This document shows, one piece after another, positions 1,777-63,495 of a stretch of 64,000 bases of DNA. Both the position numbers and the translations under genes were made by a program. The stretch lies in the IMG/VR virus record IMGVR_UViG_3300046513_000221, positions 62,001 through 126,000 of that record; one strand, written 5' to 3'. The stretch's first letter is position 1; each line of letters begins with the position of its first letter. The notes below the pieces were generated by a model that ran no database searches, had not been told where the DNA came from, and saw only the letters and a list, made by a program, of their open reading frames with translations.

Positions 1777-1788
1777 TAATCTACTGTT
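1777..1788 (-). promoter_or_regulatory. Late-type promoter AACA-N6-TA (AACAGTAGATTA)
   Basis: Matches the AR9 nvRNAP late consensus; lies ~70 nt upstream of the sheath gene. Confidence 0.75.
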
Positions 1789-1879
1789 TGGCAGTAAGAC
1801 GTACTATTCGATTGCTTTTCAGACCCGCCGCGACAGCGAAGGCTCTGGTTCAAATACGCAATCGGGAATCCCCCGTAGA

Positions 1880-2212
1880 TCACGCGAATTTCGGATGATT
1901 CCTCAAGAACTCCTCCTGATGACGCAGTTTCGCCTCATTCTGCTGAATGGTGTGCTCGTAGCTCTTCCGAAGAGCGTATTGAGTCATAAGCAGTGAATCG
2001 ACGCCACTGATCTTGGACCGGATGGAGTCCTGCTGATGAGCATCCGATGCACGGTGGAGTTCCGTCTGTAACTGTTGCTTTTGCTGATTGAGTTCTCTGA
2101 TGTGCTGGACCACATGGTCCATGCCCTGACGAGTCTTATCCAGCGTCTGCCGCATATCCTCCGGGGAGAATTCGTTGAGCAGACATTCCATGAAAAACTG
2201 TACTGAAGTCAT
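1880..2212 (-). CDS. Hypothetical coiled-coil protein, probably virion/head
   Basis: 110-aa ORF, Q/L heptads, late motif upstream. Confidence 0.65.
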   Translation of the reverse strand: MTSVQFFMECLLNEFSPEDMRQTLDKTRQGMDHVVQHIRELNQQKQQLQTELHRASDAHQQDSIRSKISGVDSLLMTQYALRKSYEHTIQQNEAKLRHQEEFLRNHPKFA

Positions 2213-2237
2213 GGCGGTTTCCCAAGTAGTTTGGTTC

Positions 2238-2249
2238 TAAGAAGTTGTT
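2238..2249 (-). promoter_or_regulatory. Late-type promoter AACAACTTCTTA
   Basis: AACA-N6-TA, 26 nt upstream of ATG 2212. Confidence 0.7.
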
Positions 2250-2259
2250 ACTGAAAGGA

Positions 2260-2290
2260 TTGGACTTACCCCGATGAAGGGTAAGTCCAA
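2260..2290. terminator. Hairpin terminator
   Basis: TTGGACTTACCC..GGGTAAGTCCAA, 12-bp stem just after the stop at 2295. Confidence 0.7.
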
Positions 2291-2294
2291 TTTC

Positions 2295-2993
2295 CTAGTA
2301 GCGCAGGATCTGCTCGACTGGCGAGAGGATCTGGTTCTTCTTACCCCGCGTCATTGTAACCGATGCTTGCAGGGATTTGTTCATATCCTCGAAGGCCACG
2401 GCGTTGAACACCGAGGTCACGCGGGACACGTTCTTGATGCTCACCAGAGAGAAATCCTCCGGCTTCACGCTCGGATCCACCAGTGCCATGCGGAGTGGTA
2501 GGGTCTCGTCCTTGTCCCAGCGCACCAGCTCTGCAGTCAGTGCTTCCAGCACGGCTGGCTGAGAGGCGATCCGAGTGTCATTCATGGCAGCGTTCTGTTG
2601 GAAGAGCTTGATCAGGTCTTCCGGGTTGCTGACGTTGATCTTCGATGCCAGCAGGTAGTTCAGGAACTTGTTGACGGTATCAACGCGCTTGAAGTACTGC
2701 GTGTTCTCGATGATGATGTCTCCGGCCTCAAACTCGATGTAGTGGTTCTTCGAGTCGGTGTCGATGTTGAAGGCTGAGATCTTCACGATGATTGGCAGGT
2801 TGACTTGGATGTCCTTGTAGCCACCGTCCTTGCCAGCAGGAACGCGGAAGATGAAGAAGCCAAGCATATGGATATCGGTATCGATAACCTCTGCCAGATT
2901 GTTGGTGAACATGTCCTTCGAGATCACCACCTGCAGGTTCTGCTTGGCAATGACTTGGTTGTTCTTTTGTTCGATGAATGGGAAGGAAGGCAT
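2295..2993 (-). CDS. RNA polymerase beta' extreme C-terminal fragment (probable small virion-RNAP subunit)
   Basis: SIKNVSRVTSVFNAVAFEDMNKSLQASV resembles beta' [25 protein letters not shown]. Start moved from 3062 to ATG 2993 because a late promoter (3017-3028) and a hairpin (3038-3069) lie in the longer 5' extension. Confidence 0.65.
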   Translation of the reverse strand: MPSFPFIEQKNNQVIAKQNLQVVISKDMFTNNLAEVIDTDIHMLGFFIFRVPAGKDGGYKDIQVNLPIIVKISAFNIDTDSKNHYIEFEAGDIIIENTQYFKRVDTVNKFLNYLLASKINVSNPEDLIKLFQQNAAMNDTRIASQPAVLEALTAELVRWDKDETLPLRMALVDPSVKPEDFSLVSIKNVSRVTSVFNAVAFEDMNKSLQASVTMTRGKKNQILSPVEQILRY

Positions 2994-3016
2994 ATCACTT
3001 CTCGGTTGGTATCTAA

Positions 3017-3028
3017 TATTATGCTGTT
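3017..3028 (-). promoter_or_regulatory. Late-type promoter AACAGCATAATA
   Basis: AACA-N6-TA, 24 nt upstream of ATG 2993. Confidence 0.65.
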
Positions 3029-9006: not shown

Positions 9007-9259
9007 AGCAATTTCTCCGTGAAATATAGCCGGACCTTCTGTCCCCTATGTTTCAGTTAGTCCGGCCTTGATAGTACATCAGGTTTTCTGGATACCGTAC
9101 GTACACGGGAAGATCCACCCCGTTATACGATGGATCTTCATCGATGAAACGCACGACCCACAGCAATAACATATGAACGAATAGCGTTACGTATTTTCAC
9201 GGAATTGTCGTCAGCTATAATACAATTCTATAGTAGAGTTCAATTCCGAGGAAGCAATT

Positions 9260-9607
9260 ATGAAGATCGTAGCTAAATTTTTCCACAAGGTCAGCGAGTC
9301 TCTGCTGGAGACTAATAGCACAAACTGGTCCATGACGAAGCTCGTCATGATGTTCCTGATGTACCCGACCGTCACCGGCATCTTCATCTACGATGCCATC
9401 ATCCACCAGCGCATGGACGTCATGAATTCGCTGGTATACATCACCGCAGTGGCGACTCCACGCGCCCTGAGCCAGATTCTGGCAGCGCGGTACGGTTTCA
9501 AGTCCAGTGACGGCAGCGCCATCACAGACGGCAACTTCGTCGATGCCTCCCCTGTGAAGAAGTCCAAACCTGCGGAGTGTCCTGATGACGACACTCCTAG
9601 ACAGTAA
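9260..9607 (+). CDS. Small membrane protein, possible holin
   Basis: Two hydrophobic segments (LVMMFLMYPTVTGIFIY; SLVYITAVATPRAL) and a charged C-tail; GAGG RBS. Confidence 0.5.
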   Translation: MKIVAKFFHKVSESLLETNSTNWSMTKLVMMFLMYPTVTGIFIYDAIIHQRMDVMNSLVYITAVATPRALSQILAARYGFKSSDGSAITDGNFVDASPVKKSKPAECPDDDTPRQ

Positions 9608-9623
9608 GGTCAGATAAAGAAGA

Positions 9624-9657
9624 TCCCCCATACACCCGTGAAGGTGTATGGGGGATT
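9624..9657. terminator. Bidirectional hairpin terminator
   Basis: ATCCCCCATACACC..GGTGTATGGGGGAT between convergent genes. Confidence 0.8.
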
Positions 9658-9696: not shown

Positions 9697-10140
9697 TTAC
9701 TTCTTGGCGACTGGCTTCTTCAGCGGAGCCTTGACCGGGGCTTTGGCTGCAGGAGCAGCTGCTTTCACCGGTGCCTTGACTGGTGCCTTAGCCGGAGCTT
9801 TAGCAGCCGGTTTGGCGGCAGCTTTAGCAGGGGCTTTCTTGGCGACCTTGTCCGCGTCGTTCACGCGCACCGACTTGCCGACCTTGAACTTCATGGTCGA
9901 GTAGGCCGGAACGTGAACGGTCTCGGTCGTGCGCGGATTGATGCGGTCGCGCGCTTCGACGTGCGCCCAGCGGAAGGTACCGATCGAGGTGCGGACCGAT
10001 TCCTTGGCCTGGATGGTGTCCTTCAGGCCGTCGAACACCGCAGCGATCATCACTTCGGTGTCTTTCTTGTTGGCGGTTACGCCGTTTGCGGCCAGTTGGG
10101 CTTGTACTGCAACTACCAGATCGTCTTTTACTGCGCTCAT
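9697..10140 (-). CDS. hup: HU-family DNA-binding protein with a PAKA/H1-like C-terminal tail
   Basis: IGTFRWAHVEARDRINPRTTETVHVPAYSTMKFKVGK is the HU arm, followed by KKAPAKAAAKPAAK repeats. Confidence 0.9.
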   Translation of the reverse strand: MSAVKDDLVVAVQAQLAANGVTANKKDTEVMIAAVFDGLKDTIQAKESVRTSIGTFRWAHVEARDRINPRTTETVHVPAYSTMKFKVGKSVRVNDADKVAKKAPAKAAAKPAAKAPAKAPVKAPVKAAAPAAKAPVKAPLKKPVAKK

Positions 10141-10224: not shown

Positions 10225-10236
10225 TAATCGTATGTT
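10225..10236 (-). promoter_or_regulatory. Late-type promoter AACATACGATTA
   Basis: AACA-N6-TA upstream of hup. Confidence 0.7.
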
Positions 10237-10395: not shown

Positions 10396-11067
10396 TTAGC
10401 CCAGCAGGTTTGCCTTGATCACTTCCACCATCTGAGCGACAGTGGTGTTTTTCTTGAAGCCAGCGATGGTGGCCTGAGCTTCTTCGCTCAGGTGCGGTGC
10501 CATCTTCTGCAGGAACTCGGTTAGCTCTGCCTTCGAGTAGGTCGAGTACTGTTCTTCGGTCAGAGGGGAGAAGGTGACTTCGCCGTTCTCTTCGCCGATG
10601 GTGGTCAGCAGGTTGATCTTCTCGCCGGTGCCGGTGCCTTGGGTGGAATCTTCGGTCGATTCTTCCGACTTGGACTCGCCAGCGCCTTCGGTGCCTTCAG
10701 GAGCGGCTTGCTCCGGGGTTTTCACGTCTTCGATCAGCTCAGCGACCGACTCCTGCGGTGCTGCCGGGGCCGGGGCTTCAGGAGCTGCGGCTTCCGGGAT
10801 CACCGGGGCGATGATGTTGGCAATGTGCTCCGGTACCGGATCGGACTCGAACACGCTGGTCGGGCGATTGATGGTGGTGCCATTCTTCAGCACTGCCTTC
10901 AGCACTTCCATCGAGAACGACTGCGACTTCAGGAAGTCGTATTGGTGGGTCAGCATCGTCACTGCTTTCAGTGGGCCATTCTTGACGAAGAACGGGATAC
11001 GGCGGGTGTCGTTCACGTCCACTACCAGATGCGAAACGTCGCCGATTTGGATATCTTCTTGGGTCAT
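10396..11067 (-). CDS. Hypothetical protein with an acidic/Pro linker
   Basis: 223 aa, AAGGAAG RBS. Confidence 0.75.
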   Translation of the reverse strand: MTQEDIQIGDVSHLVVDVNDTRRIPFFVKNGPLKAVTMLTHQYDFLKSQSFSMEVLKAVLKNGTTINRPTSVFESDPVPEHIANIIAPVIPEAAAPEAPAPAAPQESVAELIEDVKTPEQAAPEGTEGAGESKSEESTEDSTQGTGTGEKINLLTTIGEENGEVTFSPLTEEQYSTYSKAELTEFLQKMAPHLSEEAQATIAGFKKNTTVAQMVEVIKANLLG

Positions 11068-11144
11068 TTGGGTCTTCCTTAAAGGTTAAAAGAAAATCTC
11101 ACTAGCGATTTTGGTCGCTAGTGAGATTCATTTGTCTAAGCAAC

Positions 11145-11156
11145 TATGGAGTTGTT
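11145..11156 (-). promoter_or_regulatory. Late-type promoter AACAACTCCATA
   Basis: AACA-N6-TA. Confidence 0.6.
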
Positions 11157-13166: not shown

Positions 13167-13178
13167 TATCTGGTTGTT
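13167..13178 (-). promoter_or_regulatory. Late-type promoter AACAACCAGATA
   Basis: AACA-N6-TA, 28 nt upstream of ATG 13139. Confidence 0.7.
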
Positions 13179-16246: not shown

Positions 16247-16816
16247 CTAACGACCGTCGTTTCCTTCCATTTCGTGACTGAAGTGATCCTCACGTTCCTC
16301 CGCATCGCGCCGCGCCTGCTCGGCAGCGAGACGACGACGGTCGAACTCAGGATCCACATCGACCACTTGGATCAGCTCGATCCCGTGGCTACTCAGGAAG
16401 TCGTTGGAGATGCCCCCTTTGAACTCTTCCAAGAAGTAGATACGCTTCACCTTGGCGCGCTTCAGCCTCGCGGCGCATCGCATGCATGGTGAGTGCGTGA
16501 TGTAGAGTGTTGCCCCTTCCAGATTCTTTCCGGATTCCATCGCACGAGCCAGCAGCTCATCCTCCGCGTGGAGGGTGGTGTCTAGCGTACGACCGTTCTC
16601 ATCGACGGTGCTTGGATCGGAGTCGTCGGCGTTGTAGTTCCAACCGTAGCCGAGAACAGAGCCGTCTTGTCCGGTCGCGATCACACCGACTTTCTTGTCA
16701 GGAGCAGGGGAACGCTTAGCCATCTGGATAGCGATGTTAAGCCATGTATTCAAAGCTGTAGCCGGTTTCGACTTCTGATAGATGAGGAGTTCCTCGTCAG
16801 GCAGTGCTTGTTCCAT
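16247..16816 (-). CDS. dCMP deaminase (ComEB-like)
   Basis: KVG..GYGWN, HAE, LYITHSPCMRCA Zn-deaminase motifs. Confidence 0.9.
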   Translation of the reverse strand: MEQALPDEELLIYQKSKPATALNTWLNIAIQMAKRSPAPDKKVGVIATGQDGSVLGYGWNYNADDSDPSTVDENGRTLDTTLHAEDELLARAMESGKNLEGATLYITHSPCMRCAARLKRAKVKRIYFLEEFKGGISNDFLSSHGIELIQVVDVDPEFDRRRLAAEQARRDAEEREDHFSHEMEGNDGR

Positions 16817-20387: not shown

Positions 20388-20520
20388 CCACGTTTTCCGA
20401 GTCAAAGTTTTCCATTCGACATCTAGCATACTGTTGGGAGCCGATGAGTCTAATCACTTTCGAAAATGCGATATAGTTCATCGATCCCTTGACTTGGATG
20501 TAATTAAGCTATGAAACTCT

Positions 20521-21552
20521 TCAGATTTTTTCTTCCTGAGCGTCGAGCAGCTTCTGGAAGAGGAATCCTACGATTACGCGAGCCATCGCAATGCTACGAT
20601 GATTCCACTTCAAACGGTCCTCACCACTCACCATCGACAGCGGAACCTCGCGGTGCATTTCGCGGTCGTAGATAGCGAAGATGGAATTGTAACCGAAATC
20701 GCGCCAGAGCGTTTCGAGGAACGAGTCGTCGCCATACTGCTGGGTGGTCGGTACGAAGAGACGACCGTACATGTGGCCGACGGCGTGGTGCATGATCTCG
20801 CCGTTCTTGGCGATGCTCGCGGTCGTCACGAAGTTACCGGTCGCCATGTAGCGCTTGAAGAACGGATCAGAGAAACCGATCGAGCCGCTCAGCTTTTCGC
20901 GGATGGCCTCGGAGATGATCACCTTGTTGACGAAGTCCTTCATGTTCTTGCGGAACTTCGACAGCGATTTCTCTTCCGTCGCTTTACGCGTGAGGAACCG
21001 GTCCAGTTCTGGGAACTGGCGACTGATGCGGTCGTAGACGCCCTCGTACAGGATATCGTCCTGCACGCGAGCCGAGTGTACGCCCGGACGACCGTTGAGG
21101 ATGTCCACGCAGATGCCGGAGTCCTCAGCGAGGATGTACTTATTCTCGTTCTGGAACATACTGGACAGACCGCGACTCTTGATGAAGCAGTTGTCGAGGA
21201 AGGTCTGACCGGTCTCGTCCTGTTCCGCGTAGGCGTCACCTTCCAGCACGCCGAACGTCAGGATCCCGGTGGTGATCCCGGCCAGCTGGGTGTTCACCTT
21301 CAAGAAGTTGTTGAACTCGTCGATCTTGCCGTGGTTGCCGGTACCGAACGAGATGTGCCACTTGCCGTTCTTCGGATTCTCCAGCCACGCACGGGTGGAC
21401 AGGGTTCCGAAGTTATTCTGGATGACATCGATCTGGTGCTTGAGCTCCTTCACGCTATTCTGGAAGGTGCCGATCTTGTCGTGTTGCTGGTCCACCGACA
21501 CAAAGCCTATGGATAGCGTGTCTTTCACAAAGTCTACTGGTGTTTCATTCAT
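20521..21552 (-). CDS. Ham1/RdgB-family nucleoside triphosphate pyrophosphatase (divergent)
   Basis: TGNHGK, ETGQTFLDNCFIKS, AEDSGICVDILNGRPGVHSAR, FGYNSIF, NHR. Confidence 0.88.
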   Translation of the reverse strand: MNETPVDFVKDTLSIGFVSVDQQHDKIGTFQNSVKELKHQIDVIQNNFGTLSTRAWLENPKNGKWHISFGTGNHGKIDEFNNFLKVNTQLAGITTGILTFGVLEGDAYAEQDETGQTFLDNCFIKSRGLSSMFQNENKYILAEDSGICVDILNGRPGVHSARVQDDILYEGVYDRISRQFPELDRFLTRKATEEKSLSKFRKNMKDFVNKVIISEAIREKLSGSIGFSDPFFKRYMATGNFVTTASIAKNGEIMHHAVGHMYGRLFVPTTQQYGDDSFLETLWRDFGYNSIFAIYDREMHREVPLSMVSGEDRLKWNHRSIAMARVIVGFLFQKLLDAQEEKI

Positions 21553-21878: not shown

Positions 21879-21890
21879 AACAGTAGAATA
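21879..21890 (+). promoter_or_regulatory. Late-type promoter AACAGTAGAATA
   Basis: AACA-N6-TA ~30 nt upstream of the beta gene. Confidence 0.75.
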
Positions 21891-21921: not shown

Positions 21922-24900
21922 ATGCTAGTCCAGCTCGACAAGATCCTCAATTCGCGGATTTATTTCTCATCGACCCTGCAGTGCAACCCATCTACCGACT
22001 CCGGCAAGTACTACGCTTTGGCGTACGACCCGGCTGACGAGAACGGGTTCAACAACCTGCTGAAATCGATCAAGTTCATGCCAAAGGGTAAGGAGTACGT
22101 GTACTACCCGGCATCGATCTTCAACCCTACATCGTTCGCTCCGATGCCATCCACCAAGGCAAAGGCAGCGTTCTACGAGTGGCTCGACAAGAACCATCCC
22201 GCATCGCACACCAAGATGAACCAGCTGACGCTGAGCGAATCACAGCAAGCCGACCACAACCCGGTGCTGTTGAACCTCGCGTCGTACTTCACGGTTCTCG
22301 ATCCGTACGCGGAGCAACACAAGAACTCCGCCTCCAACAAATACAAGTACTTCAAGATGGTTCTGGCAAAGATCCTGCCGAAGTACTCCGAATTCTCGAA
22401 GGAGAAGATGAACCTGCTGATCGACATCAGCGGCACCGTCACCAGCTCCTTCCTCTTCTTCATCCTGTACGGTCTGCGTCACGACTACGAGGCGATGACC
22501 AAGGCATTCGAGGGCATCAACGTGATCTTCGTGGACGGTCCTCACGGCCTGTTCATGAAGCCTGATCTGGCTGATCGCAAGAAGGTCCAGTCCAATCTGA
22601 ACCTGATCGCCAAGATGCTCAACATGAGCCGCAACTTCGATCGCGATGCGATCATGAAGGACAAGGACGTAAGCATCACCGACGAGAGCGTCGCAGTGTC
22701 CTCCGACAAGGTGGACCAGAAGACCATCGATGCAGCCATTGCTGGCTTCGATATCGATCGCACCACCGAGCTGGAGGGACAGACTCCCGAGCAGATCATG
22801 GCCGCGAAGACCAAACGGATCTCCATCGCCGAGAAGGATCCGAGCGACATCGCGTCCGTGACGGTCGCCAACGAGTCCGACCTCGAAGAGATTCTCGGTA
22901 GCGTCGCCACCGATGACTTCCAGAAGGTAGCCAAGGCCAATCAGGACTTCCTGAACAAGTACGCTCCTGTACAGGAGAAAGCGATCTCCAAGGCGCGTGC
23001 TGAGGCGGAGAAAGCCTTCACCGATAGCAAGCTTTCCATCACCAAAGCTGTCGATAGTTCCGTGATGAACTCGAACGTGAAGTCGTCCGTTATTGCAGCT
23101 CTGACCTCCTCGTACTATCGCAAGATCTACAAGAAGGACATCCTGAGCATCTTCACGAACCTGAACAACGATCCTGATCATCCGGTCGTGATCACCAGCT
23201 TCGAGATGAAAGACAACTCCGATCCGCTGAACATGCTGGATGAGCTGTCCGTGCAGTTCCTCGACAAGAACGGCAAGCGCCACACCTTCACGGTGGACGT
23301 GCCTAAAGTCTCCCACGATGGCTTCCTGTACCTCAATGGCAACAAGAAGTTCGTGACGAAGCAAGCCGCGCTGCTGCCGATCATCAAAGAGGCTCCGAAC
23401 CGAGTCCAGATCACCACCAACTACAAGAAGACCTTCCTGTATCGCAAGAACGACAAGACCTCCGGTATCGTCGATCGCATCTTGAAGACTCTGGTTGGCA
23501 AGAAGATCGACGGCGTGAAGCAGATCTCCGGTAACAGCTTCGCTTCGAACCTGCCGTACAACGTCAGCATCCCTTACAACCTCTTTGGTCGTCGCCTTTA
23601 TAGCGTCGAGATCCAGCAGGGTACCAGCGGTGGCAACGTCCTGCATCTGGTGTTCAACCAGAATAAGATCCGTGAGGACATGAAGGATCTTGGATTCGAC
23701 ATCGAGAAGCTCGGCGATCATGCAATTCCAGTCGCCTTCCGCTGCATCAACAACAAGATCGAGACGGTCTACTGCGAGATGAACACCCGCTCCGGGAAGA
23801 TCATCGGTGCGTGGGATCGTACAGGCAAGCCGAAGCAGGAAAACTACAAGAACATCACTCAATTCATGGCTGACCAGATCCGCAACAGCGGCAACTCGTC
23901 CCTGATCGAGGCTTTCAACAGCACCTCCGCAGGTAAGTCACTCGGTCAGACCGAGATCCGGCTGGCCGGTCGCATGATGTCGCTCGGCGTGCTGCTCTGC
24001 TTCTACCGTGGCATGTTGCCGCTGCTGGAACAGTATGGCATCAAGTACACTGTCTCCGACAAGGGTGGTCGTGCAACCGATACGCAGACCATCCTGCGTT
24101 TCAAGGATGTGTCACTCATCATCGATGCCGAGGGAGACACGACCAAGGAACTGATCGTCAACGGCTTCTACTACCTGAACACCAAGGAGTACAACCTCGA
24201 CGACGCAGGTCAGCGCGGCGCAGTCTACATCGAGTACTTCGGCGAGTACACCGGTTCCCGGAACACCGCCAAGGCCGTGCTGAACTTCGAGTCGGCGATG
24301 ATCGATCCGATTACGTTGGAGGTGCTGAAGGATCTGCACCTGCCGACCACCTTCGTCGATCTGCTGCTGTACGGTAACACCATGCTCGGCGACTTCACGC
24401 ACAAATCGAAGAACGACATGTCGAACTTCCGTACCCGTGACGCGGAGGTCGTGTCCGTGGCGGTCTACAACACCCTGATCACCGCGTTCAACGAGTACAA
24501 ACGTACCGTGAAGACCGGTGTGGTCACCTCGATCTCGGCTCCTCGCGATGCCGTGACGAAGACTCTTCAGACCTACCAGAACATCGAGGGCTACTCGACG
24601 CTGTCACCGTTTCTGGAGATCCAGAACAAGGCTAAGACCACGTTTAAGGGTCCGTCGGGTCTAAACTCCGACGACAGCTACACTGCGGATATGAGAGCAT
24701 TCGACGAGTCCATGGTCGGGGTTTTCGGTATCTTTACCCCCGTTTCTGCACAGGTGGGTATCGCACGCTCCATGACCCTGAACCCACGCATCAACCATGT
24801 GCGTGGCTATCTGGAAAAGAAGAACGTCAATGACATGAACATGGACGAGTTGTACGCCCCCGGCGAGCTGCTCAACATCTTCGTGGCGTCCCACTCCGAC

Positions 24901-26109
24901 CCGATGCGTATCTGCATGGCGACGACTCAGGGCGGTCACATCATCGCGACCAAGGTCCAGCACAACTACCTGATCGGTACCGGCATCGACAAGACGCTGT
25001 CCCATCTGGTTGGTCAGGACTTCGCCTTCAAGGCATCGGAGGACGGTGTGGTGTCCAAGGTCGATGAGACCAACAAGCTCGTCTTCCTGAAGTACGCCTC
25101 CGGCGAGACGACCGCGATCGACATCAGCGACAAGCCAGCCAACAACTCGGCTGGTGGCTTCTACATGAAGAATCAGCTGGAATTGACTGATGGTCTGAAG
25201 GTAGGCTCGAAGTTCAAGGTCGGTCAAATCCTCGCGACGAATCGCCAGTTCTTCAAGGAGGACATGGATGGCTCGCACGGCTTCGCTGCCGGTCGCCTGA
25301 CCAAGGTCGCCCTGATGTGCCTGACGACCACCTACGAGGACTCGATGCCGATCACCGACACCGTGCGCCGCGAGATGGCCTCGACGATCATCTCGGAGAA
25401 GGAGACCATCCTCAAGGAGAACTCCCGCATCCACTCGATCGCCAAGGAAGGTCAGTATATCAACATCAACGAGCCGCTGGTCATCTTCGAGGAGATCGGC
25501 GATACCGAGAAGGCCGCACTGAGTGCCGTAGAGAAGGCTTCCAACCCGGACTTTGGTAAAGGTTCGGAGCTGGAGTATCTCGGCAAGAACGTGGTCAAGT
25601 CGAAGTACGCCGGTCTGATCACTAACATCAAGGTCTACTACAACTGCGATCTGGAGTCGCCAACGCTCGAACCAACTCTGAAGGAGTATCTGCAGGGCTA
25701 CATCGAGTCGAACAAGCGTCGCTCCGGTCTGCTGAAGGGCATCAAGGCTGACGAGCTGATCGAACAAGCATCGACCGAGCGGATCATGAAGGACAAGATC
25801 CTCGGCAATGAGATGCAGGGCGTGCTGATCGTGTTTTACATCCAGCACGAGGAAGATTCTTCTATCGGTAACAAGTTGACCTTCTTCTCCGCAGCCAAGG
25901 GCATCGTGTCCGAGGTGATCCCGGACGAGTTGGCTCCGTATACTGACTACCGTCCGAAGGATCCTATCGAGGCGATCCTGAGTCCGATGTCGCTGATCAG
26001 TCGTAACGTACCCGACCTGATGCTGACGGGTCTGTCGAACCGCGTGATCGTGGAACTGCGCAAGCAGGTTCTTGAAGATCTCGGTCTCATCCCCGTCGCT
26101 ACTGCTTGA
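21922..26109 (+). CDS. RNA polymerase beta subunit, large N-terminal part (probably virion RNAP)
   Basis: VPKVSHDGFLYLNGNKKFVTKQ, FKGPSGL..FTPVSAQVG, HSDPMRICMATTQ, TYEDS, GNKLTFFSAAKG, LSPMSLISRN; lacks the C-terminal clamp region; late promoter fits packaging. Confidence 0.92.
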   Translation: MLVQLDKILNSRIYFSSTLQCNPSTDSGKYYALAYDPADENGFNNLLKSIKFMPKGKEYVYYPASIFNPTSFAPMPSTKAKAAFYEWLDKNHPASHTKMNQLTLSESQQADHNPVLLNLASYFTVLDPYAEQHKNSASNKYKYFKMVLAKILPKYSEFSKEKMNLLIDISGTVTSSFLFFILYGLRHDYEAMTKAFEGINVIFVDGPHGLFMKPDLADRKKVQSNLNLIAKMLNMSRNFDRDAIMKDKDVSITDESVAVSSDKVDQKTIDAAIAGFDIDRTTELEGQTPEQIMAAKTKRISIAEKDPSDIASVTVANESDLEEILGSVATDDFQKVAKANQDFLNKYAPVQEKAISKARAEAEKAFTDSKLSITKAVDSSVMNSNVKSSVIAALTSSYYRKIYKKDILSIFTNLNNDPDHPVVITSFEMKDNSDPLNMLDELSVQFLDKNGKRHTFTVDVPKVSHDGFLYLNGNKKFVTKQAALLPIIKEAPNRVQITTNYKKTFLYRKNDKTSGIVDRILKTLVGKKIDGVKQISGNSFASNLPYNVSIPYNLFGRRLYSVEIQQGTSGGNVLHLVFNQNKIREDMKDLGFDIEKLGDHAIPVAFRCINNKIETVYCEMNTRSGKIIGAWDRTGKPKQENYKNITQFMADQIRNSGNSSLIEAFNSTSAGKSLGQTEIRLAGRMMSLGVLLCFYRGMLPLLEQYGIKYTVSDKGGRATDTQTILRFKDVSLIIDAEGDTTKELIVNGFYYLNTKEYNLDDAGQRGAVYIEYFGEYTGSRNTAKAVLNFESAMIDPITLEVLKDLHLPTTFVDLLLYGNTMLGDFTHKSKNDMSNFRTRDAEVVSVAVYNTLITAFNEYKRTVKTGVVTSISAPRDAVTKTLQTYQNIEGYSTLSPFLEIQNKAKTTFKGPSGLNSDDSYTADMRAFDESMVGVFGIFTPVSAQVGIARSMTLNPRINHVRGYLEKKNVNDMNMDELYAPGELLNIFVASHSDPMRICMATTQGGHIIATKVQHNYLIGTGIDKTLSHLVGQDFAFKASEDGVVSKVDETNKLVFLKYASGETTAIDISDKPANNSAGGFYMKNQLELTDGLKVGSKFKVGQILATNRQFFKEDMDGSHGFAAGRLTKVALMCLTTTYEDSMPITDTVRREMASTIISEKETILKENSRIHSIAKEGQYININEPLVIFEEIGDTEKAALSAVEKASNPDFGKGSELEYLGKNVVKSKYAGLITNIKVYYNCDLESPTLEPTLKEYLQGYIESNKRRSGLLKGIKADELIEQASTERIMKDKILGNEMQGVLIVFYIQHEEDSSIGNKLTFFSAAKGIVSEVIPDELAPYTDYRPKDPIEAILSPMSLISRNVPDLMLTGLSNRVIVELRKQVLEDLGLIPVATA

Positions 26110-26167: not shown

Positions 26168-26179
26168 AACAACTCTTTA
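26168..26179 (+). promoter_or_regulatory. Late-type promoter AACAACTCTTTA
   Basis: Heads the tail-fibre operon. Confidence 0.75.
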
Positions 26180-30859: not shown

Positions 30860-30876
30860 TCAAAATAATTATATAT
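30860..30876 (-). promoter_or_regulatory. Early/middle-type promoter ATATATAAT-N5-TGA
   Basis: Motif copy. Confidence 0.7.
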
Positions 30877-30957: not shown

Positions 30958-31512
30958 ATGACACAGCTAGACTACGAGCAATTCCCGGCAGATAGCCTGG
31001 AAATTGCAATGAATCTCATCGAGGATCTGGGTTTCTCCGAGAAGGAACTCGCCTCTATGGAGGCAGACATCATCAACATCCTCACCGAGGAGAACTACAC
31101 GACCCTCGAACTCACCTACTACGGTGAGCCGAAGGCACAGGCTCGCGCCCGGTCGTCCGGTCTAACGGGATTTTTCTATGATCCGAGTCAATCCCTGAAG
31201 AGCTGGCTGGTGGAGCAGATCACTTCTCAGCTCCCTCGCGGCTTCACTCTCGTGGACACTGAGATCCACATGGAGTGCAAATTCTACAAAGGGATGCCGA
31301 AAAGTGCGAGCAAGAAGGCCAAGGTCATGATGGAGCTCGGAGTCATCCGTCCCACGACAAAGCCTGACAACGACAACTATCTGAAGCTGGTACAGGATGC
31401 CCTGAACCGCGTCCTGTACACAGACGATGCCGTCATCACGAAGGTCTCGGCGGAGAAGTACTTTTCCTGCAAACCTCGTGCAACGATCAAGCTCCGATTC
31501 AAGCGCAAATGA
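30958..31512 (+). CDS. rusA: RusA-family Holliday junction resolvase
   Basis: GEPKAQARAR, KPDNDNYLKLVQDALN..YTDDAVI. Confidence 0.9.
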   Translation: MTQLDYEQFPADSLEIAMNLIEDLGFSEKELASMEADIINILTEENYTTLELTYYGEPKAQARARSSGLTGFFYDPSQSLKSWLVEQITSQLPRGFTLVDTEIHMECKFYKGMPKSASKKAKVMMELGVIRPTTKPDNDNYLKLVQDALNRVLYTDDAVITKVSAEKYFSCKPRATIKLRFKRK

Positions 31513-31561
31513 ACATCGGGATAGCAACAACTCCCCATCTTGAATTCCTCTTCTTTGGAAT

Positions 31562-31601: not shown

Positions 31602-31642
31602 CTGAAGGACAAGTTATTAGATGAAACAACAAGGAGCCTTAG

Positions 31643-36358: not shown

Positions 36359-36375
36359 ATATATAATAACGACGA
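36359..36375 (+). promoter_or_regulatory. Early/middle-type promoter ATATATAAT-N5-CGA
   Basis: Motif copy upstream of sbcD. Confidence 0.7.
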
Positions 36376-37649: not shown

Positions 37650-37770
37650 GAAGCACACTGGGGGATGAGCTTGGTCTACGACTCATCTCCCAACATCGGA
37701 TTACCCAGTCTCCACTCCCGGAGGCCACCCGTGTCGAGCGGGAGAAGTAACAGCTTTATGGAAAAGTAGA

Positions 37771-40431: not shown

Positions 40432-40443
40432 AACAGCTTCATA
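40432..40443 (+). promoter_or_regulatory. Late-type promoter AACAGCTTCATA
   Basis: AACA-N6-TA. Confidence 0.7.
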
Positions 40444-46132: not shown

Positions 46133-46149
46133 TCATTGCTATTATATAT
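46133..46149 (-). promoter_or_regulatory. Early/middle-type promoter ATATATAAT-N5-TGA (sbcC)
   Basis: Motif copy; divergent partner at 46238. Confidence 0.75.
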
Positions 46150-46237: not shown

Positions 46238-46254
46238 ATATATAATGGGAATGA
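46238..46254 (+). promoter_or_regulatory. Early/middle-type promoter ATATATAAT-N5-TGA (S8 protease)
   Basis: Motif copy. Confidence 0.75.
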
Positions 46255-50150: not shown

Positions 50151-50208
50151 AGAGATAAACCGGTCAAACAAGAGATTACGATGTAAACCTAGAGAAAGGA
50201 ACAGCATT

Positions 50209-50540: not shown

Positions 50541-50557
50541 ACAAGCCGGGTTTCCGA

Positions 50558-51822: not shown

Positions 51823-51830
51823 GATTTCTC

Positions 51831-53933: not shown

Positions 53934-53970
53934 TATTAAGGTGTTTCCTATGATGCGCAACACATTAGTA
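53934..53970. promoter_or_regulatory. Back-to-back late-type promoters (- 53934-53945; + 53959-53970)
   Basis: AACACCTTAATA and AACACATTAGTA. Confidence 0.7.
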
Positions 53971-60927: not shown

Positions 60928-60953
60928 TAACTAATGTTTAGAGAAGCATTTAC

Positions 60954-60996
60954 GGGCGCTACGGGATTAACTTCTCGTAGCGCCCTCTTTTTTATT
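60954..60996 (+). terminator. Intrinsic terminator
   Basis: GGGCGCTACGGGA..TCTCGTAGCGCCC plus T tract. Confidence 0.8.
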
Positions 60997-61009
60997 TAGG
61001 AGTAACGAC

Positions 61010-62365
61010 ATGGCTGCTGACCTGAACATGTCCAATCCGTCCGAGAACCCCTACGCTAAGTTCTACGAGCCTAGCTTCGGGACCATCATCGGACGTCCGA
61101 TGGCATTCAACGCAAAATGCGACCCAAACCAGCGCGTGTATCAAGACACGATGCTAAAGAACAACACGATCGTCCGGATCACTCCGGGCATCTACAACTA
61201 CAATCAGGCAAGCCTGAAGCGAGCTGATGAGATCCTGGAAGAACATAGTAAAGAGATGCAGGAACTCAAGGCCAAGGGTCTGGAACCCGGATCCTACGAG
61301 CGGAAGGTCAACGAGATCAACCAGAAGTATCAGGATAAGCTGATCAAGGAGAAGGTGGACATGCGCTACCTGACCTTCAAGCCGGACTTCCCGCACTTCC
61401 TGCGCGCCCTGCAGCTGCTGATCAACCGCACCTCCACCTCGCTCTTCAACCGGAAGCTCAACAGCGCCACCGGCTCGAAGTCGTCCTTCCTGACCGACAT
61501 CCTCGCGTCGCTGGACATCGAGCAGAACGCGGCCTACCGTGGCTTCAACATGTGGGTGGAGAAGTCCACCTCGATCTCCGAGTCCATCAACAACAGCTAT
61601 ACCAGCTCGGTGTTCGAGGGTCTCCAGAACAAGGTCTCTCGTTTCACCCGCGAGCTTCAGGCGGTCGGTATGTCGGTAGGCAACGCCACCAACGCCGACC
61701 AGCAGAAGGACGTGAAGGTTGATGGCGACTTCCAGAATCAGGCGTCCGTCCTCGGTCAGCTGGTGCAGAAAGCATCGTCTGCGATGGCAGGTTCCAAGAT
61801 CATCATCCCTCAGATCTGGGACGACTCGAAGTTCACCCGTACGTACAACATCGCCTTCCGCTTCAGCTCACCGTACGGCGACGACCGCTCGTGCTACGTG
61901 AACGTCATCCTCCCGTTCCTGTTCCTGTTGTGCTGCGCACTGCCGCGTCAGGACGGTCCTTCCGGTATGATGAACCCGTTCCTGCTTCAGATGGACTGCC
62001 CCGGCTACTTCAGCACCCCAATGGGATGCGTGACCGACATGTCGTTCGTCAAGGGCGGCAACGAGCAGCTGTGGAACTACTCCGGTCTACCTATGGTGAT
62101 CGAGGGTACGATGGCCGTGTCCGACCTGTACAACGCGCTGTCGCTCCCGCTGGAGAACCAGCAGCTGCTGAGTAACTACGGCACTGCGGCATTCCTCAAC
62201 AACCTCGTTGGTGCGTCCCTGTACTCGACGGAAGACCCTAGCGTCCTCGACCAACTGGCCAACTCCATCAAGGGTGGTCTGATGAGCGTGGCCGATCCTC
62301 TGAATCAGGCCGACGCCAAGATCCTCTCGATCATGCGTTGGGCTGGTCTGACCAAGCAGAACTAA
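61010..62365 (+). CDS. Virion structural protein (baseplate/tube-initiator-like)
   Basis: PQIWDDSKFTRTYNIAFRFSSPYGD..ALPRQ..NPFL..GCVTDMSFVKG tube-like pattern; follows the tape-measure gene. Confidence 0.65.
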   Translation: MAADLNMSNPSENPYAKFYEPSFGTIIGRPMAFNAKCDPNQRVYQDTMLKNNTIVRITPGIYNYNQASLKRADEILEEHSKEMQELKAKGLEPGSYERKVNEINQKYQDKLIKEKVDMRYLTFKPDFPHFLRALQLLINRTSTSLFNRKLNSATGSKSSFLTDILASLDIEQNAAYRGFNMWVEKSTSISESINNSYTSSVFEGLQNKVSRFTRELQAVGMSVGNATNADQQKDVKVDGDFQNQASVLGQLVQKASSAMAGSKIIIPQIWDDSKFTRTYNIAFRFSSPYGDDRSCYVNVILPFLFLLCCALPRQDGPSGMMNPFLLQMDCPGYFSTPMGCVTDMSFVKGGNEQLWNYSGLPMVIEGTMAVSDLYNALSLPLENQQLLSNYGTAAFLNNLVGASLYSTEDPSVLDQLANSIKGGLMSVADPLNQADAKILSIMRWAGLTKQN

Positions 62366-62374
62366 GGAGGAAAC

Positions 62375-62563
62375 ATGCGTAAAACGATTGGAATGGTCGT
62401 GAGCATCATCGTTCTCGGTATCACACTGAACGGTTGCTCCAGCGAACCGAAAAAGAGTACCATGCGTGTCGAACGCGGTGAGGTGACCTCGGCACCCTAC
62501 GGCTACACCGACTACTGTCGGAACCACCCCGAGTACAAGGAGTGCGGCAATGCAGCTAAGTGA
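62375..62563 (+). CDS. Lipoprotein carrying the BTLCP N-terminal P.G...C..HP...C motif
   Basis: Signal peptide plus lipobox LNG-C; AAGGAGG RBS. Confidence 0.75.
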   Translation: MRKTIGMVVSIIVLGITLNGCSSEPKKSTMRVERGEVTSAPYGYTDYCRNHPEYKECGNAAK

Positions 62564-62924
62564 ACTTGACTCCATCAACCGGCGCGTGAACGAGTCGGTT
62601 ACCTACAAGACCGACATCGAGGAGTACAACCAGCTGGAGTTCTGGAACGTGGCCGGTACGGTCGGTGACTGCGAGGACTACTGCCTCCTGAAGATCCACC
62701 GTCTTCTGGCGGCTGGACTCCCGATCTCGGCGATGTCGCTGGTGGTCTGCGCCTATGAGGACGAAGGTCACTGCGTCCTCTTCGTCGAGCTGGACGGCGA
62801 GACCTACGTGCTCGACAACAACAGCGACCAGCTGCTCTTCCCGGAGGACACCCCGTACGAGTGGATCAAGGTCCAGACCCCCGGTACGCCGGAGTGGCGC
62901 GAGATGAAGCTGGTCAAGCGCTAA
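62550..62924 (+). CDS. Transglutaminase-like cysteine protease (BTLCP/LapG family), catalytic domain
   Basis: INRRVN..Y.TD..EFW..GDCEDYCLLK..GHCVL..YVLDN (Cys-His-Asp); own AAGGAG RBS. Confidence 0.88.
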   Translation: MQLSELDSINRRVNESVTYKTDIEEYNQLEFWNVAGTVGDCEDYCLLKIHRLLAAGLPISAMSLVVCAYEDEGHCVLFVELDGETYVLDNNSDQLLFPEDTPYEWIKVQTPGTPEWREMKLVKR

Positions 62925-62930
62925 ACACGG

Positions 62931-62969
62931 AAACCCCATAGACCTTAACGGGCCTATGGGGTTTATTTT
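62931..62969. terminator. Bidirectional terminator
   Basis: AAACCCCATAG..CTATGGGGTTT. Confidence 0.8.
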
Positions 62970-63411
62970 ATTTCTTCAGGAAAGTACTCGGTCGATAGTC
63001 ATACTCGAACACCGAGCTATATCGCTCTTGCATGGTCATGGGTTCCAGCATTACCGTACGGCACTTCACCGCAACCACCTTGTCGCTGTGGTTGTGCTGA
63101 AACGCGTAAAATACTAGGCCGATGATTCTTGTTACTTCTTGTAGGGCGTCTAGGAGTGGTGGAACCTTGACGTTCACGTAGAAGACTTCTTGCTTGGTCC
63201 CGGTGACGGTTGTGTCGTATGCGAAATCCTCTTCTCGCTCCCGAGAGAAGACACGGATCTCGACATCCGGTCGTACCTCCATCGATGCATTGAAAAGGTC
63301 AAACATCTCTCTGTAGATAGGCGCGGTGCCATCCGACTCGACGTCTATATCGACACGGATCTTGTAGAAATCGCCGTACTTTGTCAGCACAGGTTTCTTG
63401 TCGGTACTCAT
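62968..63411 (-). CDS. Hypothetical protein
   Basis: Probable start MSTDKK at ATG 63411. Confidence 0.65.
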   Translation of the reverse strand: MSTDKKPVLTKYGDFYKIRVDIDVESDGTAPIYREMFDLFNASMEVRPDVEIRVFSREREEDFAYDTTVTGTKQEVFYVNVKVPPLLDALQEVTRIIGLVFYAFQHNHSDKVVAVKCRTVMLEPMTMQERYSSVFEYDYRPSTFLKK

Positions 63412-63483
63412 GTGGTTTCTTCTTTCATAAACCGTTCTTCTGCGGAACGGTGCTTTCGTTGCTCGGACAAGCATCGATTGTAC

Positions 63484-63495
63484 AACAGTTACTTA
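63484..63495 (+). promoter_or_regulatory. Late-type promoter AACAGTTACTTA
   Basis: AACA-N6-TA upstream of the prohead protease. Confidence 0.75.

What the first reader, a model, noticed from the sequence alone, without database searches (positions are those of the whole stretch)
1777..63495. AR9-type late promoter AACA-N6-TA conserved in a GC-rich phage
Seen: exact AACA-N6-TA just upstream of genes at 1777(-), 2238(-), 3017(-), 10225(-), 11145(-), 13167(-), 20424(-), 21879, 26168, 40432, 50167, 53934(-), 53959 and 63484. Variants: TG at 37749; AACT at 9047(-), 30923 and 60929; GACA at 31608. Established: this is the consensus read by the Bacillus phage AR9 non-virion RNAP, which needs deoxyuridines in the template strand, and the known AR9/PBS1/phiR1-37 relatives are AT-rich uracil-DNA phages. 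Inference: either a GC-rich uracil-DNA phage or an nvRNAP that reads the same motif with thymine.
Basis: partly seen in the sequence, partly recalled or inferred. Interest (0 to 1): 0.7.

Follow-up and report, generated by a model that had tools for sequence, protein, structure and literature searches.

The report
AR9-type late promoters, GC-rich phage
A 263-kb soil phage with 55% G+C uses the same short late-gene promoter (AACA-N6-TA) as the uracil-DNA giant phages AR9 and phiR1-37, and its genes suggest that it too replaces thymine with uracil, which would make it the first G+C-rich lineage of that group.

Summary
All 14 listed exact sites exist and face a gene. Two more promoter-placed sites (31512+, 37692+) were missed.

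Enrichment:
- Genome-wide, 46 of 83 AACA-N6-TA copies lie in sense 5-100 nt upstream of a start. That compares with about 4.5 expected by area, 11.5 in shuffles and 7 antisense.
- The motif ranks first of 28,508 gapped motifs tested.
- N5/N7 spacings, permuted words and five unrelated T-DNA jumbo phages show no such signal.
- AR9 (positive control), phiR1-37 and two other G+C-rich relatives do.
- Orthologous genes keep the promoter.

The window is part of a complete uncultivated rhizosphere jumbo phage. Its nearest cultured relative is phiR1-37.

The genome has all five nvRNAP subunits. The gp226 homologue keeps the valine that excludes thymine at -10, and none of 18 environmental homologues has Gly or Ala there.

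Homologues of the phiR1-37 dCTP deaminase and dTTP pyrophosphatase lie in the window. No ThyA, ThyX, dUTPase or UDG gene was found.

Avoidance of 6-bp palindromes falls as the number of T per strand rises, as in AR9 and phiR1-37.

Verdict: a new G+C-rich member of the AR9/phiR1-37 kind, probably with dU-DNA. TSSs and base content remain untested. The listed variant sites are not statistically supported.

The parts
1777..1788 (-). Late promoter AACAGTAGATTA(G); predicted TSS 1777; 72 nt before the tail-sheath gene (start 1705).
   Evidence: Sheath orthologues in 6 loci, phiR1-37 among them, all carry AACA-N6-TAG 72-113 nt upstream.
2238..2249 (-). Late promoter; TSS 2238; 26 nt before ATG 2212 (110-aa ORF).
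3017..3028 (-). Late promoter; TSS 3017; 24 nt before the virion structural protein gene 2295-2993.
   Evidence: The phiR1-37 orthologue also has the motif.
10225..10236 (-). Late promoter; TSS 10225; 85 nt before the HU-like DNA-binding protein gene 9697-10140.
   Evidence: The phiR1-37 orthologue has the motif at 90 nt.
11145..11156 (-). Late-promoter match; TSS 11145; 78 nt before gene 10396-11067. A terminator-like hairpin with a T-run lies between this site and the gene.
   Evidence: The order promoter-then-hairpin is unexplained.
13167..13178 (-). Late promoter; TSS 13167; 28 nt before the head-tail joining protein gene 11904-13139.
   Evidence: The orthologues in phiR1-37 (29 nt) and AR9 (34 nt) also have it.
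20424..20435 (-). Late-promoter match inside the Dtt / beta'C / Dcd gene string; about 100 nt before the 325-aa gene 19344-20321.
21879..21890 (+). Late promoter; TSS 21890; 32 nt before the 1395-aa RNAP large subunit gene.
   Evidence: phiR1-37 g099 has the motif at 34 nt.
26168..26179 (+). Late promoter; TSS 26179; 33 nt before gene 26212-26514 (tail-fibre-like N-terminus).
31512..31523 (+).
31608..31619 (+). Candidate variant GACAAGTTATTA(G); 24 nt before ATG 31643, directly after a T-run.
   Evidence: The GACA class is not significantly enriched.
37692..37703 (+).
40432..40443 (+). Late promoter; TSS 40443; 27 nt before ATG 40470 (392-aa ORF).
50167..50178 (+). Late-promoter match; TSS 50178; 31 nt before GTG 50209, which has a GAAAGGA Shine-Dalgarno sequence. 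This 93-aa ORF was not called by my gene caller.
   Evidence: The start was read by eye.
53934..53945 (-). Late promoter, one of a divergent pair; faces gene 52235-53926/53851.
53959..53970 (+). Late promoter, one of a divergent pair; TSS 53970; 40 nt before ATG 54010 of the tape-measure-like gene (to 60927).
63484..63495 (+). Late promoter; TSS 63495; 45 nt before the head maturation protease homologue, which starts at 63540.
   Evidence: The phiR1-37 orthologue has the motif at 32 nt.
16247..16816 (-). Deoxycytidylate-deaminase family gene, homologue of the phiR1-37 dCTP deaminase (Dcd). The HAE and PCxxC zinc motifs are present.
   Evidence: 34% identity, E=4e-23; PMC12697855.
17096..18946 (-). 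nvRNAP beta'C subunit, homologue of AR9 gp154.
   Evidence: PDB 7S00 chain D, E=2.7e-59.
20521..21552 (-). Ham1-family NTP pyrophosphatase, homologue of the phiR1-37 dTTP pyrophosphatase (Dtt).
   Evidence: PF01725, E=8e-20; 26% identity over 293 aa, E=2e-11. It sits at the same position in the syntenic block. The family is absent from the 5 T-DNA controls.
21922..26109 (+). 1395-aa RNAP large subunit of the second RNAP set (presumed virion RNAP), homologue of phiR1-37 g099.
   Evidence: The virion location is inferred, not tested.
36359..36374 (+). Early-type promoter ATATATAAT-N6-G; TSS 36374; before the SbcD-like gene 36420-37649.
46134..46149 (-). Early-type promoter; TSS 46134; before the SbcC-like gene 43323-46106.
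46238..46253 (+). Early-type promoter; TSS 46253; before gene 46302-48161.
30861..30876 (-). Early-type promoter; TSS 30861; before gene 29971-30819.

Best explanation
The window belongs to a complete, uncultivated 263-kb jumbo phage from rhizosphere metagenomes. It is a G+C-rich (55%) member of the AR9/PBS1/phiR1-37 lineage.

Its late genes, mostly virion genes, are preceded by AACA-N6-TA, often followed by G at +2. This is the promoter of the phage's own non-virion multisubunit RNA polymerase. By homology with AR9, the sigma-like fifth subunit (gp226 homologue) and betaN bind the template strand 3'-UUGU-5' at -11 to -8. The -10 base is flipped into a pocket that has no room for a 5-methyl group. 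Transcription starts at the A of TA.

For this to work the DNA should carry deoxyuridine in place of thymidine. The phage has the phiR1-37-type means to achieve that: a dCTP deaminase homologue to make dUTP and a Ham1-family pyrophosphatase homologue to destroy dTTP. It has no thymidylate synthase or dUTPase.

A second, A+T-rich motif (ATATATAAT-N6-G) marks early genes. It is presumably read by the injected virion RNAP, as in AR9.

Shown here: the motif, its placement, its conservation among relatives and orthologues, the homologies, and the retained pocket residues. Inferred: that transcription starts at these sites, which polymerase reads them, that they are late, and that the DNA contains dU.
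For: Promoter:
- Positional, strand-specific and spacing-specific enrichment.
- The same pipeline recovers the experimentally mapped AR9 signal (76 of 274 copies, 15.6 expected) and finds it in phiR1-37 (61 of 189, 11.6 expected).
- It is replicated in two further G+C-rich contigs: 15 of 26 and 18 of 36, against 1.4 and 1.7 expected.
- It is absent from five unrelated T-DNA jumbo phages (1-6 sites each).
- Orthologous genes share the promoter: Fisher P = 1.3e-4 (rel3), 1.3e-5 (rel4), 1.5e-4 (phiR1-37) and 0.03 (AR9).
- Tail-sheath orthologues in six loci (not all independent: they represent four distinct upstream sequences), with 39-56% GC, all have AACA-N6-TAG upstream within otherwise unalignable DNA.
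- Distances from predicted TSS to start codon (mode 19-50 nt) resemble those in AR9.
- Downstream genes are virion genes.

Polymerase:
- Homologues of all five AR9 nvRNAP chains: gp226 (E=8e-37), betaN (4e-83), betaC (2e-109), beta'N (3e-71) and beta'C (3e-59).
- The 2.1bis helix reads YSDRVMWEYLKN. V206, W208, Y210 and S245 are kept, I207 is M and Y246 is F.
- In betaN, R363 and N382 are kept and K375 is R.
- Among 18 environmental homologues the V206 column is V in 16 and I in 2, never G or A.
- The roles of these residues come from PMC9209446.

dU-DNA:
- Dcd and Dtt homologues lie in the same block as in phiR1-37: large RNAP subunit / Dtt / unknown gene / beta'C / Dcd (enzyme functions from PMC12697855).
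- No ThyA, ThyX, dUTPase (either family) or UDG was found.
- All five T-DNA controls have ThyA and none has a Ham1-like gene.
- Homologues of all the protein families (g207, g278/g282, g234, g244, g196) that PMC10303552 lists in its table of proteins exclusive to uracil-DNA phages are present.
- Observed/expected for 6-bp palindromes by number of T per strand (0/1/2/3) is 0.13/0.70/0.87/1.26. phiR1-37 gives 0.00/0.67/0.97/0.95 and AR9 0.14/0.41/0.98/0.93.
- That gradient matches the reported cleavage behaviour of dU-DNA (PMC12697855).
Against: - No transcript 5' ends are available. The only RNA libraries with matches hold short 90-96% identical capsid-gene fragments of relatives.
- No chemical evidence on the DNA exists.
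- Dcd-family deaminases also occur in T-DNA phages. The Dtt homologue is only 26% identical to the characterised enzyme, so its substrate is unproven.
- The six 'exclusive' proteins may simply be lineage markers.
- The palindrome gradient is not unique to the clade. Two of the five T-DNA controls show a weaker one: Lu11 0.33/0.42/0.75/0.77 and pEa_SNUABM_6 0.57/0.76/0.92/0.98.
- No Ung inhibitor is recognisable, though none is known for phiR1-37 either (PMC10303552).
- Gene starts come from a crude home-made caller, so individual distances may be off.
- At 11145(-), and at the 60929 variant, a terminator-like hairpin follows the site, which is odd for a promoter.
Confidence: 0.75

Rival explanations
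1. The promoter and polymerase are the same, but the genome contains ordinary thymine. In that case the nvRNAP of this G+C-rich lineage has adapted to read 3'-TTGT-5' in the template strand.
For: The sequence itself cannot distinguish U from T. AR9 gp226 V206G shows that a single change can relax the -10 requirement (PMC9209446). I207 is replaced by M and K375 by R in the pocket. The genome was assembled from ordinary metagenome libraries, which shows only that the DNA was sequenceable.
Against: - The valine is kept, and it is never G or A in 18 environmental homologues.
- In AR9, exclusion of the -11 methyl comes from DNA backbone geometry, not from a side chain (PMC9209446).
- Homologues of both phiR1-37 dU-pathway enzymes are retained in synteny.
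- No ThyA or ThyX is present, whereas 5 of 5 T-DNA jumbo controls have ThyA.
- The palindrome avoidance pattern matches the dU phages.
Confidence: 0.15
2. Thymine is replaced by another base made from dUMP or dUTP, such as 5-hydroxymethyl-dU or a hypermodified derivative, or is only partly replaced.
For: Other phages build T substitutes from dU precursors (general knowledge). Nothing measured here rules out a further modification step carried out by one of the many unannotated genes.
Against: - No ThyA-family gene was found. By general knowledge, the known dUMP hydroxymethylases belong to that family.
- A C5 substituent would clash with the retained valine, just as a methyl group does (PMC9209446).
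- The nearest relatives with measured DNA have plain dU (PMC12697855).
Confidence: 0.05
3. The motif is not a promoter. It would then be a compositional by-product of A+T-richer intergenic DNA, or another signal such as a regulator binding site or a processing site.
For: Abundance in the window alone is only marginally above shuffles. Two sites are followed by terminator-like hairpins.
Against: - Shuffled zones, the antisense strand, N5/N7 spacings, permuted words and unrelated phages all lack the signal.
- The motif is identical to the mapped AR9 late promoter.
- It sits before orthologues of AR9 genes that also carry the motif.
Confidence: 0.03

Closest known systems
Bacillus phage AR9 / PBS1 late promoters and non-virion RNAP (gp105, gp089, gp270, gp154, gp226; PDB 7S00/7S01)
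   Same: - The same AACA-N6-TA core, with similar distances to start codons.
- Homologues of all five subunits.
- The 2.1bis helix with V206 is conserved.
- There is a separate A+T-rich early promoter with N6 before a G start.
- Orthologous late genes carry the motif.
   Different: - Protein identity is only 27-38%.
- The genome is 55% G+C against 28%.
- G at +2 is frequent here (31 of 52) and not in AR9 (17 of 90).
- The TG start variant is not enriched here.
- The dT-clearing enzyme is of the phiR1-37 type (Ham1-like Dtt), not the PBS1 nucleotidase type.
- No Ugi homologue was seen.
- AANA words occur once per 38 bp here, against once per 10 bp in AR9.
Yersinia phage phiR1-37 (dU-DNA, 262 kb, 32.5% G+C)
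   Same: - It is the nearest cultured relative: 81 shared genes, usually 30-50% identical.
- The genome size is nearly the same.
- The block large RNAP subunit / Dtt / unknown gene / beta'C / Dcd is syntenic.
- The extended promoter AACA-N6-TAG is shared.
- No recognisable Ung inhibitor is present in either.
   Different: - G+C content differs by 23 points.
- This phage comes from rhizosphere soil, is uncultivated, and its host is unknown.
- The literature read here says no late-promoter consensus had been found for phiR1-37 (PMC5312081). The motif appears there in my scan (61 sites; +2 G in 57 of 69).
phiKZ-type nvRNAP with gp68 (Chimalliviridae)
   Same: Split beta/beta' multisubunit phage RNAP with a fifth sigma-like subunit. 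Transcription is independent of the host.
   Different: phiKZ reads T-containing double-stranded DNA with a TATG-type late promoter (PMC5312081, PMC9209446). The phiKZ-like control RP31 shows no AACA-N6-TA enrichment and encodes ThyA.
Roseophage DSS3_VP1 (dU-DNA phage outside this lineage)
   Same: The strategy is a dCTP deaminase plus an enzyme that clears dT nucleotides (PMC12697855).
   Different: It is an unrelated phage whose clearing enzyme is an HD-family dTMP phosphatase. No relation to its transcription system was examined here.

Membership tests
AR9-type late (nvRNAP) promoter | Non-template AACA at -11 to -8, exactly six bases, then T at -1 and A/G at +1 | tested here: met
   46 sense-upstream sites have N6 spacing, against 6 for N5 and 5 for N7. 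Permuted words are not enriched. TA is enriched but TG is not.
AR9-type late (nvRNAP) promoter | Located a few tens of nt upstream of late (virion) genes, on the coding strand | tested here: met
   The modal distance from TSS to start is 19-50 nt. Downstream genes include tail sheath, virion proteins, tape measure, protease and head-tail joining protein. Lateness itself is inferred.
AR9-type late (nvRNAP) promoter | Transcription starts at the last base of the motif | not testable with these tools
   No usable RNA data. The metatranscriptome contigs were short fragments of relatives.
AR9-type late (nvRNAP) promoter | Read by an nvRNAP holoenzyme containing a gp226-like specificity subunit | tested here: inconclusive
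   All five subunit homologues are encoded. Binding and initiation were not tested.
AR9-type late (nvRNAP) promoter | Requires deoxyuridine at template positions -11 and -10 | not testable with these tools
   The indirect evidence is in favour: V206, R363 and N382 are kept, and K375 is R.
AR9/PBS1/phiR1-37 jumbo phage lineage | Two sets of split multisubunit RNAP genes plus a gp226 homologue, and shared core genes | tested here: met
   81 genes have phiR1-37 hits and 62 have AR9 hits at E<1e-5.
AR9/PBS1/phiR1-37 jumbo phage lineage | A+T-rich early promoter followed by N6 and a G start | tested here: met
   ATATATAAT-N6-G occurs at about 17-20 sites. They lie before SbcCD, helicase and gp226-homologue genes. 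The TSS is not measured.
dU-DNA phage (thymidine fully replaced by deoxyuridine) | Phage dCTP deaminase supplying dUTP | tested here: inconclusive
   A homologue is present with intact zinc motifs, 34% identical to the characterised phiR1-37 enzyme. Its substrate is unknown.
dU-DNA phage (thymidine fully replaced by deoxyuridine) | Enzyme that removes dTTP or dTMP from the pool | tested here: inconclusive
   A Ham1-family homologue of phiR1-37 Dtt sits at the syntenic position. Its activity is unknown.
dU-DNA phage (thymidine fully replaced by deoxyuridine) | No thymidylate synthase, no dUTPase and no uracil-DNA glycosylase of its own | tested here: met
   No match for PF00303, PF00692, PF08761 or PF03167. 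One sub-threshold PF02511 match (13 bits) falls in an ORF with no Pfam hit.
dU-DNA phage (thymidine fully replaced by deoxyuridine) | Inhibitor of host uracil-DNA glycosylase | tested here: not met
   No AR9 small protein gives a blastp hit. The same holds for phiR1-37, whose inhibitor is unknown (PMC10303552), so this does not exclude membership.
dU-DNA phage (thymidine fully replaced by deoxyuridine) | dU in place of dT in virion DNA by chemical analysis | not testable with these tools
   This needs LC-MS or UDG sensitivity testing of the DNA.

The most novel reading that the evidence does not exclude
The G+C-rich soil lineage keeps the AR9 promoter and the 'uracil pocket' but has thymine, or only partly substituted, DNA. 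Its nvRNAP would then read 3'-TTGT-5' in the template strand by some means other than the known V206G route. That would be a natural thymine-reading version of a template-strand-reading polymerase.
Probability: 0.12. Interest if true: 0.75.

Novelty: new member of a known kind. Interest (0 to 1): 0.5.

Why it matters
All AR9-like phages described in the papers I read infect low-G+C hosts or have A+T-rich genomes. Only twelve gp226 homologues were known in 2022 (PMC9209446).

- This finding points to a soil and rhizosphere branch with 50-56% G+C that keeps the whole system: two phage RNAPs, template-strand promoter reading and the dU pathway.
- In G+C-rich DNA the short promoter stands out sharply, since more than half of all genomic copies are promoters. 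These genomes are therefore good material for defining the promoter and its +2 G extension.
- The comparison also yields a late-promoter consensus for phiR1-37, which earlier work had not found.
- If the DNA is dU-DNA, it extends this anti-restriction strategy to G+C-rich hosts, where only about 22% of bases are affected.
- The avoidance of palindromes graded by T content may offer a sequence-only hint for dU-DNA in metagenomes.

Tried and rejected
- A megablast of the RNAP gene against the phage collection found nothing. Only protein-level relatives exist.
- RNA evidence: two soil metatranscriptome runs and one unlabelled run hold 4-23% of the capsid gene's words. Laid on the locus, they were short contigs 90-96% identical, meaning relatives. 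They had no informative ends, so no TSS could be read.
- The DNA runs are assembler contigs and say nothing about base modification.
- I first guessed that G000 49980-51563 was the betaN subunit. It is the major capsid protein (PDB 7X30-like).
- One search was a malformed query and gave nothing.
- A single-protein scan of viral contigs with the 1395-aa RNAP subunit found no relatives. An alignment-based scan with the tail sheath did.
- The weak ThyX match (13 bits) was followed up and dismissed.
- Depletion of the motif inside genes is modest: 28 copies against 41 +/- 6 in codon shuffles. I do not build on it.
- The Dtt / beta'C / Dcd string should be early. Only a one-mismatch early-type site (ATATATGAT-N6-G, about 270 nt upstream of Dtt) was seen by eye in the 370-bp A+T-rich spacer. 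It was not scored by the matrix.
- Structure prediction and complex prediction were not used, because sequence homology to solved AR9 chains was already decisive.

Full report
**What the window is.** The window is bases 62,001-126,000 of a 263,413-bp IMG/VR virus record with direct terminal repeats, 55.2% G+C and estimated completeness of 100%. Near-identical DNA occurs in three rhizosphere metagenome runs.
- No nucleotide-level relative exists in the phage collection.
- At protein level, the 1395-aa RNAP subunit at 21922-26109 is closest to g099 of Yersinia phage phiR1-37 (39.5% identity over 99% of its length). The Staphylococcus S6-like phages, Listeria LPJP1 and Bacillus AR9/PBS1 follow at about 34%.
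- With a simple gene caller of my own (about 300 genes), 81 genes have blastp hits in phiR1-37 and 62 in AR9. Long stretches are syntenic.

**The observation.**
- Each lies between genes and points at the next gene.
- After checking starts by eye, distances from the final A to the start codon are mostly 24-85 nt. The extremes are 20424(-) at about 100-136 nt, and 53934(-) at 8 nt if the gene starts at ATG 53926.
- Two further exact sites in promoter position (31512+, 37692+) were missed. Five matches lie within genes.

**Statistics.** Raw abundance in the window is only marginally high: 21 against 13.4 +/- 3.7. The evidence is positional.
- Genome-wide, 46 of 83 copies lie in sense 5-100 nt upstream of a called start. 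The zone's share of the genome predicts 4.5. Shuffling the zones gives 11.5. The antisense strand of the same zones has 7.
- Changing the spacer to N5 or N7 gives 6 and 5.
- Permuted or single-base-changed words give at most 21, in line with their own abundance.
- Counting all 28,508 motifs of the form 4-mer/N3-9/2-mer, AACA-N6-TA ranks first (P=1.6e-14).

**Controls and replication.**
- The same script recovers the experimentally established AR9 signal: 76 of 274 copies, 15.6 expected. For comparison, 94 mapped late TSSs carry the motif (PMC5312081).
- It gives a clear signal in phiR1-37: 61 of 189, 11.6 expected.
- Two other G+C-rich contigs found through the gp226 homologue replicate it: 98 kb at 54.6% G+C (15 of 26) and 95 kb at 49.5% G+C (18 of 36), against 1.4 and 1.7 expected.
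- Five jumbo phages outside the lineage (RP31, PaBG, Lu11, RSL1, pEa_SNUABM_6; 120 kb each) give 1-6.
- Presence of the motif is correlated between orthologues. Against rel3 the table is 10/4/3/25 (P=1.3e-4), rel4 11/3/3/27 (1.3e-5), phiR1-37 17/6/8/27 (1.5e-4) and AR9 9/5/5/14 (0.03).
- Tail-sheath orthologues in six loci with 39-56% G+C all have AACA-N6-TAG 72-113 nt upstream, within DNA that is otherwise unalignable. Some of the six are near-duplicates, so they represent four distinct upstream sequences.

**Extended consensus.** Position +2 is G in 31 of 52 sites here and in 57 of 69 in phiR1-37, but shows no preference in AR9. Position +3 is never G here. The consensus for this branch is therefore AACA-N6-TAG.
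- The TG start variant known from AR9 is not enriched here (9 against 8.2).
- The site at 31608 remains a reasonable individual candidate.

**Which genes carry which promoter.** Late-type sites precede:
- the tail sheath and two virion structural proteins;
- a head-tail joining protein and an HU-like protein;
- the tape-measure-like gene and the head protease homologue;
- the large subunit of the second RNAP set.

A different motif, roughly TTTG-N3-ATATATAAT-N6-G, occurs about 17-20 times. It precedes SbcD- and SbcC-like genes, a helicase and the gp226 homologue. It has the architecture of the AR9 early promoter AAATATATATTAT-N6-G (PMC5312081). The two-polymerase programme therefore seems to be conserved as a whole.

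**The polymerase.** Homologues of all five chains of the AR9 nvRNAP structure are encoded:

| AR9 chain | Location | E-value |
|---|---|---|
| gp226 | G000 223804-225288 | 8e-37 |
| betaN | G000 35428-36873 | 4e-83 |
| betaC | G000 215580-217646 | 2e-109 |
| beta'N | G000 203422-204780 | 3e-71 |
| beta'C | window 17096-18946 | 3e-59 |

According to PMC9209446, the -10 template uracil sits between gp226 I207 and betaN R363. It bonds to betaN K375, and its C5 is 3.9 A from the C-beta of V206. V206G makes the enzyme accept thymine. The -11 uracil has no room for a methyl group because of the DNA backbone.
- Here the helix reads YSDRVMWEYLKN. V206, W208, Y210 and S245 are kept, I207 is Met and Y246 is Phe.
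- In betaN, R363 and N382 are kept and K375 is Arg.
- Among 18 environmental homologues from the large protein collection, the V206 column is Val in 16 and Ile in 2, never Gly or Ala.

**Uracil or thymine.** PMC12697855 shows that phiR1-37 makes dUTP with a dCTP deaminase. It destroys dTTP with a Ham1-family pyrophosphatase encoded nearby.
- Both have homologues in the window: 16247-16816 (34% identical, zinc motifs intact) and 20521-21552 (PF01725; 26% identical over 293 residues). They sit in the same block (large RNAP subunit / Dtt / unknown gene / beta'C / Dcd) as in phiR1-37.
- The genome has no match to ThyA, either dUTPase family or UDG. The one sub-threshold ThyX match falls in an ORF with no Pfam hit.
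- All five T-DNA jumbo controls have ThyA, and none has a Ham1-like gene.
- Homologues of all the protein families that PMC10303552 tabulates as exclusive to uracil-DNA phages are present. These may be lineage markers rather than dU functions.

**A sequence-level hint.** PMC12697855 reports that dU-DNA is cut at G+C-only sites, partly protected at sites with one T, and fully protected at sites with two. I compared observed and expected counts (maximal-order Markov) of all 64 six-base palindromes, grouped by T per strand.

| Genome | 0 T | 1 T | 2 T | 3 T |
|---|---|---|---|---|
| This phage | 0.13 | 0.70 | 0.87 | 1.26 |
| rel3 | 0.02 | 0.66 | 0.80 | 0.99 |
| rel4 | 0.13 | 0.82 | 0.97 | 0.96 |
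| phiR1-37 | 0.00 | 0.67 | 0.97 | 0.95 |
| AR9 | 0.14 | 0.41 | 0.98 | 0.93 |

- GCCGGC, CCGCGG, CCCGGG and CTCGAG each have 0 copies where 62-129 are expected.
- In none of the five lineage genomes is any palindrome with two or more T strongly avoided.
- The T-DNA controls have G+C-only ratios of 0.33-0.91. All five have at least one strongly avoided two-T site.
- Two controls (Lu11, pEa_SNUABM_6) show a weaker gradient. I treat this as supporting, not decisive, evidence.

**Conclusion.** The motif is real, is far beyond chance in its placement, and is the AR9-type late promoter in a new G+C-rich soil branch of the AR9/phiR1-37 lineage (confidence about 0.9). That the DNA carries dU rather than T is probable (about 0.75) but unmeasured. 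A thymine-reading enzyme remains possible (about 0.12-0.15).

The kind of system is known, so I rate this as a new member of a known kind. The additions are the G+C-rich lineage, the TAG extension shared with phiR1-37, a late-promoter consensus for phiR1-37, and the palindrome pattern.

**Limits.**
- Gene starts come from a home-made caller.
- No transcript or chemical data exist.
- There are only five controls.
- The host is unknown.

Noticed in passing
window 30861-30876(-), 36359-36374(+), 46134-46149(-), 46238-46253(+); weaker matches with TSS at 8382(-) and 16149(-); also G000 225325(-), before the gp226 homologue: A second conserved upstream motif, about TTTG-N3-ATATATAAT-N6-G, occurs 17-20 times genome-wide. 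It lies before DNA-metabolism genes and the nvRNAP specificity subunit. It looks like the counterpart of the AR9 early (virion RNAP) promoter AAATATATATTAT-N6-G.
   Followed up: partly
whole genome G000; also L058-L067 (two relatives), phiR1-37 and AR9: Six-base palindromes made only of G and C are almost absent: GCCGGC, CCGCGG, CCCGGG and GGGCCC have 0 copies and GGCGCC has 1. Avoidance fades as the number of T per strand rises. The same gradient appears in the proven dU-DNA phages, and is weaker or absent in five T-DNA jumbo phages.
   Followed up: partly
phiR1-37 record (L016-L029): phiR1-37 has 61 sense-upstream AACA-N6-TA sites, with G at +2 in 57 of 69. The AR9 transcriptome paper states that no late-promoter consensus had been found for this phage (PMC5312081).
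   Followed up: partly
window 11085-11156(-) and 60929-61005(+): At two sites the promoter-like motif is followed, before the gene, by a G+C-rich hairpin and a T-run that looks like an intrinsic terminator. The order promoter-then-terminator is unexplained. It could be an attenuator, or a terminator for upstream transcripts.
   Followed up: no
window 21553-21921: A 370-bp A+T-rich spacer lies between the divergent Dtt string and the large RNAP subunit gene. It holds the late promoter at 21879(+), a one-mismatch early-type site (ATATATGAT-N6-G) on the minus strand near 21824-21845, a hairpin with a T-run, and a TATAAT-like word.
   Followed up: no
window 53934-53970: Two late promoters face away from each other, with only 13 bases between the two 12-mers. 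They serve the tape-measure-like gene and the 563-aa gene on the other strand.
   Followed up: no
L051 (G000 48001-53500): Soil metatranscriptome libraries (runs X4, X5) and another run (X6) contain capsid-gene fragments 90-96% identical to this phage. Related phages are therefore present, and possibly transcribed, in other soils.
   Followed up: partly
window 62968-63474(-) against 63190-63543(+): My gene caller is unsure which strand is coding here, and also at 9215-9631, 29944-30819 and 46269-48209. The motif copies at 63008(+) and 63752(-) could not be assigned to a gene.
   Followed up: no
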